Shown here: positions 1,315-57,947 of the stretch, piece by piece
Layout: every line of letters begins with the position of its first letter
Position numbering within the stretch: the first letter of the stretch is position 1
Translations under genes and position numbers: made by a program
Assembly (NCBI RefSeq): GCF_006345805.1
Contig: NC_043000.1
Location: 16,988,001-17,052,000 of the forward strand
Direction of reading: 5' to 3'
Length of the DNA: 64,000 nt
From: Octopus sinensis
Lineage: Eukaryota
Notes under the pieces: generated by a model
What the model was told of the DNA's origin: nothing
The model's input: only the letters and a program-made list of their open reading frames with translations
The model's database searches: none

Positions 1315-1431
1315 CTCAAATTTTGGACTTCCTGGTGGATGAAGTCGACGGTCAGTCTTGATAACGTAGTGAGCTGATGCTGGAGTAAGGATAGCCGTCA
1401 TTCTCTGCCTGTACTTAGAATCCTGTGCTGC
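1315..1431 (-). CDS. Candidate coding exon (117 nt, phase 0/0): AAQDSKYRQRMTAILTPASAHYVIKTDRRLHPPGSPKFE; protein not recognised
   Basis: Minus strand: pyrimidine-rich acceptor (ctctcgccacatctcttcag|G) and donor GAG|gtactg. Only one of three frames is open. In-frame ATG with A at -3 (MTAILTP...). Unique, non-repetitive sequence. No homology search possible. Confidence 0.55.
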
Positions 1432-1524
1432 CTGAAGAGATGTGGCGAGAGTGACCAGAAGAATGTCCTCTCTCTCTTTGTCTCTCCCTCTCTATCTTTT
1501 TTTTTTGCTGTCTTTGAGTAGTGA

Positions 1525-1536
1525 CCAATGACGTCA
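1525..1536. promoter_or_regulatory. Overlapping CCAAT and perfect CRE palindrome (CCAATGACGTCA)
   Basis: TGACGTCA at 1529-1536, about 100 bp upstream (minus sense) of the candidate exon acceptor. Confidence 0.35.
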
Positions 1537-1734
1537 ACACACACAAGTGCCAGTGGTGTGACTATTTTAAAATGTTATCGTAAATACCAACTTCATTTCA
1601 GAACTTTCGCTCTTGTCTCAAGCACCAAAATTCCTGCTGCTAGCTGTCAGCCTCTTTTCTTCCTCAAATCCCACAATGACACCCTCCTGCTCATGTGCAG
1701 CTCTCAAACTAAATGGGCTACCTTAGTTAAAACG

Positions 1735-4518: not shown

Positions 4519-5420
4519 TTTTTTGAATTGCATGAACTAAAAGTCAGAGGAGGACAGGATAAACTACCTGCATCAACTTGCTATAAAAGCAGGTAGTAAT
4601 TTTACCTTGCCTTATTCTTAGTGCAAGTTTTGAAGAGTGCAGTTCGATTTTAACAGTTAATTTTTCAAAGCTATAATGGAAGTGACAAAGGAGCATCTTC
4701 AGCATATTTTGCTTTATGAGTTCAATAAAGGCAACAATGCAATGGAAAGTGCAAGGAATATTAATGGAGTATATGGGGATCGGACAATAAGCGTGAGCCA
4801 GTGTCAATGGTGATTCCAGGAATTCTGAGCCAGAAACTACAGCCTAGAAGATGAGCCTTGTCCTAGAAGATCTGTAAAGCTCAATAAGGACATCCTGCAA
4901 ACCCTGGTGGAACAAAATCCCATTGTACTGTTGAGGAACTACCAGAGAAGGTTGGATTTGGTCATTCAACCAGTCATTCAAGTCAACGCGAGAAGAAAAA
5001 AGACCATCTCTGGTTTCAAGACGAAAGGTGTTCTTCCATAAGGATAATGCTAAGCCACATTACAGCGAGGATGACATTCCAAGGGCTGGAGCAGTTTGAA
5101 TGGGAAACGATGCCCCACCCACCATATTTGCTGGACATTGTCCCATCTGATTATCATTTATTCCGCTGTCTTCAAAATCATTTGGACAGAAAAATTATGA
5201 ATTCTGTAGACAAGGTCAGAACAGTACTAGAGGAGAATTTTTCATCATGAACAAGTGAATTTCGGAAGAGGTGCTTTGCAAGTCTACCAGATAAATGGAA
5301 GAGCATTGTAGAAAATGAAGGAGAGTATATTTTTTTATTTTAGATTAAGAAAGAACATTATTTTAATTTTGAAAAATAAAAGAAGTATAAAAAAACTGCA
5401 TTATTTATGGAATGACCCAA
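4494..5420 (+). mobile_element. Internally deleted mariner (Tc1/mariner) transposon with pseudogenised transposase
   Basis: TA-flanked TIRs TTGGGTCATCCCATAAATAATG / CATTATTTATGGAATGACCCAA. From ATG 4676: MEVTKEHLQHILLYEFNKGNNAMESARNINGVYG...LEDEP (HTH, with stops). C-terminal PHPPYLLDIVPSDYHLF matches the mariner YSPDLAPSDYHLF motif. Confidence 0.92.
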
Positions 5421-6665: not shown

Positions 6666-7644
6666 AAATGATGAATGATGAAATCAGTGTAATAGTTTGT
6701 TCATCAATCTGACACTGACTAATGAATGATACTGGAGCAGTGCAAGGTTTGTTGGTTGTTTTTGTCTTTTATAGCGAAAAAGCTAGGCATTCATCAGACA
6801 CTCTCTTGCTCTTGCACAATGTGCCCAGTGGCAAGATAAAGTCAGAACAGCTGAGCTTGTAAGAGGATGCAAAAGGTTACCAAACTGGTTGAAGGGATCT
6901 CCGGGCCTCACATTAATATCTAATTTAGTTTGTCCAAAGCCACAAAGCTATGAACCAGATGTTTGACCTTCACCATGGCTTGGTTGATAGTGTATTTTAT
7001 TGACCCTAGAAGGAGAAAGGCAAAGTTGACCTTGAGGGATTTGAACTCAGAAACACTATAAGGGATTTTATCTGGCACCCTATTGGTTTACCATCCATCA
7101 CACCACCACTACTTATGCATATTCCTTATGATTAGGTACAAGGAGCTAATTTTTGTGAGGGAGTAATACACAGCGGGAAGTGAATCACAATATGTTGTTA
7201 TATGGCATTAAAGAGGGATGAAATTATCTTCTATTGCAAGGTATGTTCAGTAAACCTTGATATCTGATGTATTCTGGGTATGAAATAGTGACATGATGAT
7301 ACATCATACAGAGAAGGATGACTGTGGGGGTAGTTCCTTGGGGTGAGACAAGCCCAGTCTGTAGAATGCTATTAGGAATACATAGAGGGGATGGTGAAAA
7401 ATAGTTAAGACACATTAGAAATGTTCTCCTTTCAAGAACCATTCAACCTGTTATCACTTTCACTTAAAAAAAAAAAAACGGCGTACATTAATTGATGATA
7501 ATTATGATGATGATAATTGGTAAAGATGATGTTGATAGTAGGCAATGATGATGGTGGTGATGTGGATGATGAGGATGATGATGACAGTAGCAGAACCGCT
7601 GAAGGGCAGACAATTACTTCCAGTTCGTTACACTTCAGCTGTTC

Positions 7645-9650: not shown

Positions 9651-10046
9651 TATATATATATATATTACACATATATATATACATACATACATACACAGAC
9701 ACAAACACACAAATGCACACACATACTGTAGGAATGTATGAGTAGTACACTGTGACTGGTAAGTACAAAGATAAGACAAATTATAAAGTTTGCAGGTGAT
9801 AATATAAACCAGTGCTGTCTATGATGTCTAGATAATATTCACAAGAGGAATACCATTTTGATAATTGATAAATCCTTTATCTCACAACTCCCAACACACA
9901 CACACAAACACTAAAATAGTAGCTTCTCAAGGCAAATATATTGTGACAAGTTCAAAATACCATTGCAATAGATTATGAGTAATTTGCAGTCACCATTTAC
10001 CAACCAAGTCCAGCTTACACACCTCCATTGTGACTAATACTAAAAC

Positions 10047-10467: not shown

Positions 10468-10828
10468 ATAGGAAGGCTATATACACATTCCTCTAAAAAG
10501 GGCCACAATACCTCACCCCATCACGCAGCACTGTACACAGCAAACCCAGAATGCTACACTGTACCCTCAGACAACACACCCAAATTACCACAATTGTACC
10601 CTAAACAATGATTGAAAACGGTATGTAACTTAGATGCAACCTTAATTGTGGTTTAGTATGTTTTATGTACAGATGCTAGGGGAGGGCTACTGAGTAACAA
10701 TGAGTCCCATCAGTTCTGATTCTAGTATATATAATCTACAGCAGGTTACCAATTTTTTTTTTTTTCAAATCTCTGCCACAGTTCTAATTGTGCAGAGCTT
10801 TAAATAGAGCTAAGGGACTAGCACTTAC

Positions 10829-10851
10829 CTATGTGTAGGAATAAATAGATA

Positions 10852-10888: not shown

Positions 10889-11407
10889 AAGATAAGGGGA
10901 GAAAGAAATAGATGGGAAGAGGGATAAAGAGAGAGTAAGAGAGGATGAGAAAGTGGAATAAGGGCGGGGAAGAGAGAAAGGGAGAGAAATAGATAACAAG
11001 AGAGCGGAGAGGATGGGAAAGAGAAATAAAAGGGAGAGAGAGAGGGAGAGAGATAGAGAGAGAGGGAGAGAGATAGAGAGAGAGAGAAATAGAAAATAAT
11101 TACAGGAAAGCAAGCCAGGTTAATGAGAGAGTAGAGGTGAATTAATGACAGAAGGTCAGATATATTTCTGGCACGGGTCTGTTTTGGCCCAATAAATTCA
11201 CACCGCATAATAAACATTTTTATGCTTGGGGGGGGGGGAGCTGAGGTTGAGGGGTGCCAGGTGAAGGCGGATCACTGAACAGTCAGCCTCTGGTTTATTT
11301 CAGACCAGTTAAACAAGGGGTGCTCTTCCGGTGGCAGTGGCAGTGTTAGGTTGGTTGGTACTCAGGCCAACATTCCTGAGAAGGCAGAGAGGAAGCTTTT
11401 TAGAAGA

Positions 11408-11532
11408 CAAGAAGAAGAAGAAGAAGAAGAAGAAAGAAGAAGAAGAAAGAAGAAGAAAGAAGAAGAAAAAGAAAGAAAAAAAAAAAAAGAAAAAGAAGAA
11501 GAAAAAGAAGAAGAAAAAGAAAAAGAAGAGAA
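11408..11532 (+). repeat. (GAA)n/poly-purine simple repeat
   Basis: Direct inspection. Confidence 0.95.
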
Positions 11533-12952
11533 GCAGCTACCATCAGCATCACTACATAGTACACTGCAGCTGCTTCTACAACTATCGCCAAGACATAGTC
11601 CACTGCAGCAACCACCACCACCAAGACATCATTACACAATGCAATGCAAAAAGGGAGCCCCTACGTAGCTATTCGTCCTGCGAAAAATAGCAGCCAAATC
11701 ACCTTCAAGTTATACTTCTCCATTTTAAAAACAGGACAAACATGTCAGATGATACAGTCCTAGAGATGCTACAAGAGACAAGAGAGTCATGGTTGGCCTA
11801 CCTTTGATCACAGGTCTGCTCAGTTTAGGTTAACCAGGAATTAATTAACACAACTACTTCTACCAGCAACACAAAGACATTCCACACATCAACAATCACA
11901 ACCACCATTTTTCTTGCTGGTATGGGTTAGATGGTTTGACTGAAACTGGTAAGCTTGAGAGCTGCACCAGGTTCCAGTCTGTTTTGGCTTGGTTTCTACA
12001 GCTGGATTCCCTTCCTAATACCAACCACTCTACAGAGGGTACTGGGTGTCTTTTACATGTCTTGGAAAAAATCATGGGGAACCATTTTCTGTAAGTGGGC
12101 TTTATGAATCATAGCTCACTACAAAAAAAATTCAAGGTAATTTTCCATGAGGTGTACAGTTCAGAAAATCTTGCAGGCTGCAAGATGTCCATGACTAGTT
12201 TAGATGTTTGTTTTGCAACAACAAGATCTGGGTTCATTCCTACTGCATGTTATCTTGGGTAAATACAATTTTCTAGAGCCCTTTGTTGGCTCATACCTTG
12301 TGTGTGAAAGTGGGTAAATTAAATTGGTAGGAAACCTGTTGGGTAGATTGTAGTTGTAATTCTAAAGGTTGACAACCCTATTGCACTGTGTTGTGCTAAC
12401 TCTACCTCAGTAATTATGTTAAGGGTTTGAAAACAGGTAAATACTTTTTTTAAAGAAATTTACCTTGACAAATTAATGATTTGTAAGCCATGCAAAGAGT
12501 CTTCAGCTGAACCAATCATTTGTTAAGCAACCAACCACTCCTACTGCCAGGTACTCAAATGTTATTTACAATGCTAACTTTTCACTAAAAGGTAGATCAG
12601 TGTAATTCTACAGCAAGAAACTATTAAAAAATAAAGAAATCAACACAAGACATTTGAGGGATGTTTCTATGCAGCTATTTAACCTGTATGAAACAGTAAC
12701 TAAATCTCCCTCAGAACATACCTTGCCATTTTAGAATAGAATACATTGGATTAATGTGGTTTGGGGCACACTGCCTAGCAATAATATGGGATGGTCCTGG
12801 TAGGAACGTTTTTAATTATAGGTTTGCTTGATCAGAAGCAAAAAAAAAAACAAAAAAAAAACACAAGAAACCCTACCCGCCGAAAATCTCAGGATATCAG
12901 AAGCTAAATTACTCAAAAGCAACACTGATAAGTTACCAAACTCTGAACTTAC

Positions 12953-13045
12953 CTTGCATTAAAATAATTCGATGTAGTGAGAAGATTTTGCAATTAAAAT
13001 GACTTACCTATAAGAAAAAGAAAAAAGGAAAATACATTAGAAAAC
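12953..13045 (-). other. Recursive splice site (TAG|GTAAGT at 13008/13007) with 55-nt cryptic RS-exon 12953-13007
   Basis: Minus: ttctaatgtattttccttttttctttttcttatag|GTAAGTC...GCAAG|gtaagt. Branch-like CTAAT, long polypyrimidine tract, juxtaposed 3'/5' sites and a second consensus donor. Confidence 0.7.
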
Positions 13046-22442: not shown

Positions 22443-22595
22443 CTGCCATCATTAATGCGAGACAACTGGTTTCCCCACCGCAGCCACGTTTTAATTGCAA
22501 TCACTGACTTAACAGAAGTTCGTGGACACATCAACTGTATTATTTTAGCAGGCACGGAATGTCTGCGAAAATCATGCGACCTGCTCCTTTCTTAC

Positions 22596-22779
22596 CTTTA
22601 GACAGGGGGGGAAAGGGAAAATTTAAATAAATAGAATAGCACAACAGTAAATAAAAAAAAAAAAAAAAAACTATTTTACACACACGGTATTTCTATAGGA
22701 CTAAACTTGGAATTGTGTAGTGTGTAAAATACCGTAGTTTCTTCGGATGTGGATGTTTCAAATATAGCAAATTACGATT
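22596..22779 (-). other. Candidate non-coding (5'UTR-type) exon, 184 nt
   Basis: Acceptor tttttatttatttatttttattcag| and donor AAG|gtaaga; no ATG; unique sequence. Confidence 0.4.
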
Positions 22780-38948: not shown

Positions 38949-39771
38949 TTAAGGTAAATTATTATCTATCTTTTATATTCTCAGTTCAAATCTTGCAGAG
39001 TTTGTCTTTCATCCATCAAAGATTGGTGAAAGTACCAGTCAAGTTTTGAGATTCATTAAATTGACTTCAGCCTTTCTACCAATAATTTCAGCCAAGTGCA
39101 TATCTCAGAAATTGAGATATCCAAGGACCAGGCGGTGTGTTAAACTAGGTAATGAGTTAAATCTACCACTCAACAACTCAGAACACAAAGCGTCTCAACA
39201 TATACTACAAATTATCATGTCTGACATGCTAGCAATTTTGCAGATCCAACACTCTAAACTGGTACTTTATTTTATCAACCCACAAAAGGATAAATGGCAA
39301 AGCTAATCTCAGCAGGATTTGAACTGAGCCTAAGTGAACAGTGCAAAGCATTTGTACTAATCCCTAATGACATTGTTGATTTGCTGCCTATTGTTAATGT
39401 TTAGCCCCAGGTAAGAGCTGACCTAGTAAACATGCTAAAAAAGGATTCTAACTATAACCATTCCACTGTATTTTCATACATAGTGTACCAAGGACTACAT
39501 CATCAAGTGACTTCCTCTTATTAAAATGACATGGTATGATTTGAGTGAGACTGGACTGCTATTTTAGATAGACAGAAAGATCAGGTAGATTATCCTTCAT
39601 TGGCTTGGTATTGTCACTGGTCTTGTTATTTCTCTATTTGCCACAAGGACAACAAAAAGATAAACATTACAATACAGTGCAAAACCAGAGAAAGGAAGCT
39701 AAGAGAATGTGACAAAGATGCATGGCATACGGATATACATCTCTCCGTGTGTGTATATACATACATACGCA

Positions 39772-57709: not shown

Positions 57710-57947
57710 GACCTTTTTCAACACCTCCTACGAGGAAAGAAGACAGTCAATCTGCAGGCTGGAGACCTGGTTCGAATAGTAGCAACAGAGTGGAGTCCGC
57801 TAAAGACATCCATGGGTCAAGCGGTGAGGACCTTTTTCAGCACCTCCTACGAGGAAAGAAGACAGTCATCTGCAGGCTGGAGACCTGGTTCGAATACTAG
57901 CAACAGAGTGGAGTTCGCTAAAGACATCCATGAGTCAGGCGGTGAGG
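57710..57947 (+). repeat. Tandem duplication of a 119-bp unit
   Basis: GACCTTTTTCA restarts at 57829; few mismatches. Confidence 0.9.

What the first reader, a model, noticed from the sequence alone, without database searches (positions are those of the whole stretch)
12953..13045. Textbook recursive-splicing site with a cryptic 55-nt RS-exon in a probable cephalopod intron
Seen: branch-like CTAAT, a ~25-nt pyrimidine tract, then TAG immediately followed by GTAAGT, and a second perfect donor AAG|GTAAGT 55 nt downstream. The exon is not a multiple of 3 and has stops in two frames. Established: this is the architecture of recursive splice sites in Drosophila and vertebrate long introns, where a cryptic exon defines the site and is then skipped. 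I do not know of a description in cephalopods. It lies on the same strand as the candidate exons at 41.1, 22.6 and 1.3 kb.
Basis: partly seen in the sequence, partly recalled or inferred. Interest (0 to 1): 0.82.

Follow-up and report, generated by a model that had tools for sequence, protein, structure and literature searches.

The report
Candidate recursive-splice exon, octopus ankyrin gene
A 55-base exon-like unit that begins with its own splice-donor signal lies 11.6 kb upstream of the first coding exon of the Octopus bimaculoides giant ankyrin gene, which makes it a credible but unproven candidate for stepwise (recursive) removal of a long intron, a process not yet described in cephalopods.

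Summary
The motif is real. On the minus strand there is CTAAT, 21 uninterrupted pyrimidines, TAG|GTAAGT (junction 13008|13007), a 55-nt segment (13007..12953) and then AAG|GTAAGT. The 9-mer alone is ordinary (2 found, 1.55 expected). The full composite is rare, roughly 1e-4 or less per 64-kb window, and it is the best exon-like unit on either strand.

Window 1401..1315 (minus) encodes residues 1-29, at 100% identity, of XP_052823414.1, a 7515-aa canonical ankyrin of Octopus bimaculoides. The site therefore lies on the sense strand, 11.6 kb upstream of that exon, in the 5' region of a giant gene. Its vertebrate relative ANK3 is a known recursive-splicing host.

Not shown: the upstream exon, transcription across the site, any splicing intermediate, and conservation. 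The one retrievable relative is distant and has no such motif within 10 kb upstream of its copy of the exon. The downstream donor is a perfect consensus and so is not weaker than the regenerated one. This argues against silent skipping and fits an included 5'UTR, alternative or poison exon equally well.

Verdict: a plausible RS-exon candidate, a new member of a known kind if confirmed, and testable with public RNA-seq.

The parts
13036..13040 (-). Branch-point-like CTAAT; putative branch A at 13037, 29 nt upstream of the acceptor G
   Evidence: Read directly from the sequence. It matches YTNAY; its use as a branch point was not tested.
13012..13032 (-). Polypyrimidine tract of 21 uninterrupted C/T, with TT at -6/-5 (13013, 13012)
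   Evidence: The acceptor score of 14.4 bits is second best on the minus strand, and no plus-strand acceptor is as good. The TT rule comes from Duff et al..
13008..13010 (-). Acceptor TAG (the candidate recursive 3' splice site; junction 13008|13007)
   Evidence: It is the only juxtaposed acceptor|donor site in the window at stringent thresholds on either strand.
13002..13007 (-). GTAAGT donor core that would be regenerated as a 5' splice site once an upstream exon is joined at 13007 (the ratchet-point donor)
   Evidence: core score 8.7 of a possible 9.1.
12953..13007 (-). 55-nt candidate RS-exon. Its length is not a multiple of 3, only one frame is open, and it contains an ATG at 12959-12957.
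   Evidence: it is the top acceptor+donor unit of 181 on both strands, at 26.4 bits against 22.4 for the next best; a unit of at least 26 bits is expected 0.007 times per strand. The DNA is unique within the window and shows no transposon-like repeat structure.
12947..12952 (-). Second donor GTAAGT, preceded by AAG (12955-12953): a perfect consensus 5' splice site closing the 55-nt unit
   Evidence: 12.0 bits; one of 3 donors at or above 12 bits on the minus strand, with none on the plus strand.
1315..1431 (-). Verified exon: 30 nt of 5'UTR plus the ATG (1401-1399) plus 29 codons. It is the first coding exon of O. bimaculoides LOC106871604 isoform X43 (giant ankyrin). It is preceded by a strong acceptor (cag|G at 1432|1431) and ends GAG|GTACTG.
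   Evidence: 100% identity, residues 1-29; XP_052823414.1; ANK repeats, ZU5, UPA, Death. The exon and its donor position are conserved in a distant relative (P0007/L001).
22590..22600 (-). Weaker second juxtaposed site, AAG|GTAAGA (junction 22596|22595), with a mediocre donor (GCG|GTGGGG) 117 nt downstream. It lacks TT at -5/-6.
   Evidence: At lax thresholds there are 2 composite sites on the minus strand against 0.043 expected per window for both strands together.
10823..10831 (-). Second TAG|GTAAGT. It follows a (TC)n(CA)n microsatellite, has no good downstream donor, and has AC at -6/-5. It is probably a chance match.

Best explanation
The 55-nt segment is most likely a genuine exon-like unit recognised by the spliceosome. 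It lies in the long 5' region of the Octopus bimaculoides giant ankyrin gene (LOC106871604, minus strand) and is built as an RS-exon.

Inferred mechanism:
1. The strong acceptor (branch A 13037, tract 13032-13012, TAG 13010-13008) and the perfect donor at 12952 define the 55 nt as an exon.
2. An upstream 5' exon, not yet identified, is spliced to 13007. This recreates NNN|GTAAGT at the junction.
3. That regenerated donor competes with the downstream AAG|GTAAGT. If the regenerated donor wins, the 55 nt leave with the next 11.5-kb intron segment, which is recursive splicing. If the downstream donor wins, the 55 nt stay in the mRNA.

If retained, the 55 nt would be 5'UTR sequence carrying an upstream ATG when joined to exon 1431. 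They would be a frame-shifting poison exon when placed between an upstream coding first exon and exon 2.

Because the two donor cores are identical, I expect mixed or regulated use rather than a silent 'zero-nucleotide' ratchet point.

Shown: the anatomy, its rarity, the strand, the gene and the distance. Inferred: transcription across the site, the upstream exon, and every splicing step.
For: - Anatomy is confirmed and matches the published ratchet-point/RS-exon definition. It includes TT at -5/-6 and a size like the 51-nt Ubx mI/mII RS-exons.
- It is the best exon-like unit of 181 on both strands. The composite is expected at or below about 1e-4 per window.
- It is on the same strand as, and 11.6 kb upstream of, a verified exon of a 7515-aa ankyrin. 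That exon has a strong acceptor, so it needs an upstream exon.
- The 'isoform X43' label indicates many isoforms.
- Window-unique DNA has T>A by 5.2% on the minus strand in 15 of 16 4-kb bins, plus a slight G>C excess. A known sense-strand intron of the orthologous gene in L001 shows the same sign.
- Exon-like units are enriched on the minus strand (8 against 2.4 expected, P about 0.01) and none reach that score on the plus strand.
- Vertebrate ANK3 is one of the few known recursive-splicing host genes. Recursive sites favour long first introns.
Against: - There is no RNA evidence of any kind.
- The upstream exon was not found, and no protein-coding exon is detectable upstream in the window.
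- A CRE plus inverted-CCAAT element at 1521-1537, with a similar element in L001, suggests a promoter just upstream of exon 1431. Isoform X43 may therefore start downstream of the site.
- The downstream donor is perfect. In flies and mammals, by contrast, ratchet-point donors are generally the stronger of the two.
- The only retrievable relative has no acceptor|donor juxtaposition within 10 kb upstream of its copy of the exon. That species is too distant to align, and the octopus site lies at 11.6 kb.
- The splice matrices are approximate and not octopus-specific.
- Copy number of this sequence in the whole genome is unknown.
Confidence: 0.45

Rival explanations
1. It is an ordinary 5'UTR or alternative cassette exon of the ankyrin gene. 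It is included whenever it is recognised, its perfect donor at 12952 splices to exon 1431 or to exon 2, and its initial GTAAGT is incidental and never used as a donor (for example because it is repressed after exon ligation).
For: - Exon 1431 has a strong acceptor and needs an upstream donor. The donor at 12952 is the strongest one within about 13 kb upstream on that strand.
- A perfect downstream donor favours inclusion.
- In a 5'UTR, a 55-nt exon costs no reading frame.
- Hundreds of annotated human exons start with a donor-like motif yet are constitutively included.
Against: - A given exon starts with a donor core this strong only about 6e-4 of the time (39 of 64000 positions). The coincidence therefore has to be paid for.
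- Fly data suggest that repression of such regenerated donors is weak outside deuterostomes.
Confidence: 0.22
2. It is a chance pseudo-exon: splice-like motifs that the spliceosome never uses, lying in untranscribed DNA upstream of the ankyrin promoter or ignored within an intron.
For: - The core 9-mer is at chance frequency, and a second copy at 10831 looks accidental.
- The promoter-like element at 1521-1537 could mean the site is upstream of the transcription unit.
- By my estimate, a 2.7-Gb genome should hold a handful of chance composites. That figure is 1e-5 to 1e-4 per strand-window times about 84,000 strand-windows, extrapolated.
- No motif is seen in L001.
Against: - The composite is rare and is the top-ranked unit on both strands.
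- It lies on the sense strand of a giant gene whose vertebrate relative uses recursive splicing.
- A window-wide strand skew fits transcription of the minus strand.
Confidence: 0.28
3. The motifs belong to a low-copy transposable element or another repeat that carries splice-like sites. Or the unit acts as a decoy exon that promotes intron retention rather than recursion.
For: - 37% of the window is repeated within the window itself, and one repeat family carries strong minus-strand acceptors at 7005, 34239 and 38148.
- Decoy exons are described in long introns (PMC7373989, listed).
Against: - The segment 12060-13383 has no second copy in the window.
- It has no terminal inverted or direct repeats, no Rfam match and no protein similarity.
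Confidence: 0.05

Closest known systems
Drosophila intronic ratchet points with cryptic RS-exons (Ubx, kuz, Bx, luna; Hatton 1998, Burnette 2005, Duff 2015, Joseph 2018/2021)
   Same: - Tandem Yn-YAG|GTAAGT.
- TT at -5/-6.
- A short (about 50 nt), out-of-frame exon closed by a second donor.
- Location kilobases from the next exon in a long gene; the 11.5-kb segment falls within the fly range of 2.6-63.6 kb.
   Different: - The downstream donor is as strong as the ratchet-point donor, whereas fly cryptic RS-exons usually have the weaker downstream donor.
- Conservation and saw-tooth or lariat evidence are absent here.
- The host is a lophotrochozoan, where the process is undescribed.
Expressed RS-exons: Ubx mI/mII (51 nt) and vertebrate annotated RS-exons repressed by the exon junction complex (Blazquez 2018)
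   Same: It is a microexon-sized unit beginning with a donor motif and having a good donor of its own. The outcome is set by competition between the two donors.
   Different: Inclusion in octopus mRNA is unknown. At 55 nt the unit is not frame-preserving, so within coding sequence it would act as a poison exon.
Vertebrate cryptic RS-exons in long neuronal genes (CADM2, ANK3, and others; Sibley 2015)
   Same: - The host is an ankyrin gene, as with ANK3.
- The site lies in the long 5' region or first-intron zone.
- It is an RS-exon with premature-stop potential.
   Different: - The vertebrate RS-exon's native donor is weaker than the reconstituted one.
- No positional orthology is shown or expected.
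- The octopus intron boundaries are unknown.
Pseudoexons, poison exons and decoy exons in long introns
   Same: It is a short non-coding unit with good splice sites, deep in non-coding DNA, with a frame-shifting length.
   Different: Ordinary pseudoexons do not start with a consensus donor. That juxtaposition is the rare feature here.

Membership tests
Recursive splice site / ratchet point with RS-exon | Juxtaposed strong 3' splice site and 5' splice site (Yn-YAG|GTRAGT) | tested here: met
   TAG|GTAAGT with a 21-nt pyrimidine tract. It is the only such site at stringent thresholds on either strand.
Recursive splice site / ratchet point with RS-exon | TT at positions -5/-6 of the acceptor (196 of 197 Drosophila ratchet points) | tested here: met
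   Positions 13013 and 13012 are TT (rule). The sites at 10828, 22595 and 29013 fail this test.
Recursive splice site / ratchet point with RS-exon | A downstream 5' splice site delimiting a short RS-exon (about 50 nt) for exon definition | tested here: met
   AAG|GTAAGT lies 55 nt downstream.
Recursive splice site / ratchet point with RS-exon | Cryptic class: the regenerated donor is stronger than the RS-exon's own donor, so the exon is skipped | tested here: inconclusive
   Both cores are GTAAGT. The downstream donor has an ideal AAG at -3..-1 (12.0 bits). The regenerated donor's -3..-1 come from an unidentified upstream exon, so it can be equal at best.
Recursive splice site / ratchet point with RS-exon | Lies inside a long (more than about 10 kb) intron on the sense strand | tested here: inconclusive
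   The sense strand of the ankyrin gene and the 11.6-kb distance upstream of a verified exon with an acceptor are shown. The upstream exon was not found, and a possible promoter lies at about 1.5 kb. Strand skew fits transcription of the minus strand.
Recursive splice site / ratchet point with RS-exon | The acceptor|donor motif is conserved between species while the exon body is not | tested here: inconclusive
   Only one distant relative could be fetched (L001). Non-coding DNA does not align, and there is no juxtaposed site within 10 kb upstream of its exon. The rest of the contig is not retrievable. No closer octopod DNA is available.
Recursive splice site / ratchet point with RS-exon | Splicing intermediates: junction reads into the site, saw-tooth coverage, lariats from the regenerated donor | not testable with these tools
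Ankyrin (ANK1/2/3, Drosophila Ank/Ank2) as host gene | 24 ANK repeats, then ZU5-UPA, then a death domain | tested here: met
   Pfam on P0006: Ank families with E-values down to 1e-194, ZU5 3e-39, UPA_2 1e-53, Death 1e-15.

The most novel reading that the evidence does not exclude
Cephalopods use fly-style recursive splicing through cryptic or alternative RS-exons to process the very long 5' introns of giant neuronal genes. Under this reading, the octopus giant ankyrin gene carries such a site just as vertebrate ANK3 does. This would be the first recursive splice site in a lophotrochozoan. It would imply either bilaterian ancestry of the mechanism or repeated recruitment in ankyrin genes.
Probability: 0.35. 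Interest if true: 0.6.

Novelty: new member of a known kind. Interest (0 to 1): 0.45.

Why it matters
Recursive splicing is documented in Drosophila and in vertebrates. The one evolutionary survey I read sampled fission yeast, Drosophila, sea urchin, Ciona, lamprey, zebrafish and human. It included no lophotrochozoan. That survey found cryptic RS-exons prevalent in flies and annotated RS-exons prevalent in deuterostomes.

Cephalopods pair very large genomes with complex nervous systems. A confirmed site would show whether the fly-like or the vertebrate-like mode applies there. A site in an ankyrin gene would parallel ANK3. The claim can be tested directly with existing O. bimaculoides RNA-seq and the NCBI gene model for LOC106871604.

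Tried and rejected
1. The word-indexed homology search with the 1.3-kb exon found nothing. This was a false negative, because exhaustive HMMER later found the ankyrin. Negative results are therefore weak evidence.
2. Pfam on all window-unique stop-free segments of at least 33 aa found nothing on the minus strand. On the plus strand it found only a Mos1 transposase HTH.
3. A chimeric 2266-aa query, made of all frames around the site plus 29 splice-flanked open segments, gave no hit.
4. Exact look-ups gave nothing on record for window ORFs, O. bimaculoides UniRef proteins or P0006.
5. The exact 27-mer is absent from metagenome and GTDB contigs.
6. Rfam gave no match, so the ACTTACCT on the plus strand is not a U1 gene.
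7. There is no transposon-like repeat structure around the site.
8. SINE orientation shows no strand bias.
9. A local duplication as the origin of the two AGGTAAGT copies is rejected, because the flanks are unrelated.
10. The 41.1-kb 'exon' has stops in all three frames. The big acceptor at 11375 is only the end of a (TTC)n microsatellite.
11. Drosophila Ank2 as a recursive-splicing host is not found in the library.
12. Sibley 2015 itself is not held.

Full report
**Observation.** Read on the minus strand, the region contains:
- CTAAT at 13040-13036;
- 21 uninterrupted pyrimidines at 13032-13012;
- TAG at 13010-13008, abutting GTAAGT at 13007-13002;
- a 55-nt segment, 13007..12953;
- AAG|GTAAGT, with the GT at 12952-12951.

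Only one frame of the 55 nt is open. One of the two stops is the TAA inside GTAAGT itself.

**Is it more than chance?**
- The 9-mer YAGGTAAGT is not unusual: 2 matches against 1.55 expected. The other copy, at 10831, follows a microsatellite and has no partner donor.
- Adding ten pyrimidines gives 1 match against 0.13 expected.
- Two AGGTAAGT 30-60 nt apart give 1 match against 0 in 100 shuffles.
- An offset control expects 0.03-0.07 juxtaposed strong acceptor/donor pairs per strand.
- Among 400 third-order Markov windows, such a juxtaposition occurred 0.005 times per window and never with a downstream donor.
- The 13007..12953 unit is the top-scoring acceptor+donor pair of 181 on both strands, at 26.4 bits against 22.4 for the next. 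A unit of at least 26 bits is expected 0.007 times per strand.

I put the composite at about 1e-5 to 1e-4 per strand-window. That means a handful of chance cases in a 2.7-Gb genome.

**Context.** The window is octopus DNA.
- Translated repeats hit only Octopus bimaculoides proteins.
- 37% of the window is repeated within the window. The site lies in window-unique DNA with no transposon hallmarks and no Rfam match.
- No protein domain is encoded on either strand apart from a mariner/Mos1 remnant.
- A chimeric query of candidate exons found nothing.

- Window 1401..1315 (minus) is 100% identical to residues 1-29 of XP_052823414.1, 'LOC106871604 isoform X43', O. bimaculoides, 7515 aa.
- Pfam shows ANK repeats, ZU5, UPA and a death domain, so this is a canonical giant ankyrin.
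- No other exon of this protein is in the window.

The window is therefore at least 62 kb of 5' sequence of the ankyrin gene on the minus strand. The candidate site lies 11.6 kb upstream of the start-codon exon, on the sense strand.

That exon begins with a strong acceptor, which implies upstream 5' exons. The 'X43' label implies many isoforms.

**Indirect support for transcription of the minus strand across the window.**
- Unique DNA has T>A by 5.2% on the minus strand in 15 of 16 bins.
- A bona fide sense-strand intron of the same gene in a relative shows the same sign.
- Exon-like units are enriched on the minus strand and none reach that score on the plus strand. Some of the minus-strand acceptors sit in repeats.

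**Counter-evidence.**
- The only TGACGTCA in the window, with an adjacent inverted CCAAT, lies about 100 nt upstream of exon 1431. A similar element is found upstream of the exon in the relative. One promoter may therefore lie downstream of the site.
- The upstream exon was not identified.
- The single retrievable relative (ENA contig, L001; the exon is 76% identical in protein and 78% in DNA) shares no alignable non-coding DNA. It has no acceptor|donor juxtaposition in the 10 kb upstream of its exon. The next 5.5 kb could not be fetched. Conservation is thus untested at a useful distance.

**Comparison with the literature.**
- Ratchet points are tandem acceptor|donor pairs with a short (about 50 nt), poorly conserved, usually out-of-frame cryptic exon and a downstream donor. 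The ratchet-point donor is generally the stronger one, which explains skipping. The Ubx mI/mII RS-exons are 51 nt (PMC8605326).
- Fly ratchet points carry TT at -5/-6 in 196 of 197 cases. They sit in introns of 11-133 kb and cut them into segments of 2.6-63.6 kb (10.1101/006163).
- Vertebrate RS-exons follow the same logic. A regenerated donor competes with the exon's own donor, and the exon junction complex represses many regenerated donors (PMC6224609).
- ANK3 is among the few vertebrate recursive-splicing genes (PMC8797253; 10.1101/2025.08.14.666599).

The octopus site meets the anatomical criteria, including TT. It does not show a weaker downstream donor: both cores are GTAAGT and the downstream one has an ideal AAG. 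In mouse, strong downstream donors go with detectable downstream intermediates and inclusion. I therefore expect mixed or regulated use, not a silent ratchet.

**Weighing.**

| Explanation | Probability |
|---|---|
| RS-exon that undergoes recursion in at least part of the transcripts | 0.45 |
| Ordinary included 5'UTR or alternative exon whose initial GTAAGT is unused | 0.22 |
| Unused chance pseudo-exon | 0.28 |
| Repeat-borne motif or decoy exon | 0.05 |

No paper in the library links recursive splicing with cephalopods or octopus. If confirmed, this would be a new member of a known kind in a new lineage, with a parallel to ANK3.

Noticed in passing
window 1315-1431 (-), ATG 1401-1399: This is the first coding exon (29 codons) of the O. 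bimaculoides giant ankyrin LOC106871604 isoform X43 (7515 aa). The word-indexed homology search missed it, and only the exhaustive HMMER search found it.
   Followed up: yes
window 1521-1537 (-); L001 about 9655-9671 (+): TTGACGTCATTGGTCAC combines a full CRE palindrome with an inverted CCAAT box. It contains the only TGACGTCA in 64 kb and lies about 100 nt upstream of the ankyrin exon. A similar TTGACTTCATTGTTCAC lies about 345 nt upstream of the ATG in the distant relative. It may be a conserved promoter element.
   Followed up: partly
window about 4661-5247 (+): A degraded mariner/Mos1-type transposase remnant: HTH_48 at E=4.6e-13, plus a DDE-region motif (…PSDYHLF…) in another frame.
   Followed up: partly
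window 7005, 34239, 38148 (-): One repeat family carries a strong acceptor-like site, (c)tttgcctttc..ttt(c/t)ag|GG, on the minus strand in three copies. It is a possible source of exonisation and it inflates the minus-strand acceptor counts.
   Followed up: no
P0001-P0005 (O. bimaculoides UniRef proteins): Translated SINE-like repeats from the window match internal stretches of annotated O. bimaculoides proteins (AADC, a PLAT-domain protein, FAM98A and others) at 69-84% identity. This indicates exonised or mis-annotated repeat fragments in those gene models.
   Followed up: no
window 57710-57947 (+): A 118-nt tandem repeat, 2.0 copies at 95% identity, inside an otherwise unique 3-kb stretch. 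It creates long spurious open frames.
   Followed up: partly
window 22595 and 29013 (-): Further but weaker acceptor|donor juxtapositions on the gene's strand: AAG|GTAAGA with a donor at +117, and CAG|GTGGGC with no donor. The plus strand has only one lax site, at 39411.
   Followed up: partly
window, whole length: There is a consistent strand asymmetry. Unique DNA has A>T by about 5% on the plus strand in 15 of 16 4-kb bins, which is about 8 SD. This fits transcription-associated skew with the minus strand as sense.
   Followed up: partly
L001 (ENA ERZ21867824, contig ctg75754l): A contig filed under a metagenome assembly carries the orthologous ankyrin first coding exon, with the donor position conserved. 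It is evidently host (cephalopod-like) DNA at 32% GC. Exon 2 is not within 7.5 kb downstream.
   Followed up: partly
window 11420-11545 (-): A long (TTC)n/(CTT)n microsatellite ending in ..ctcag| produces the single highest acceptor score in the window (11375). It is an artefact of low complexity.
   Followed up: yes
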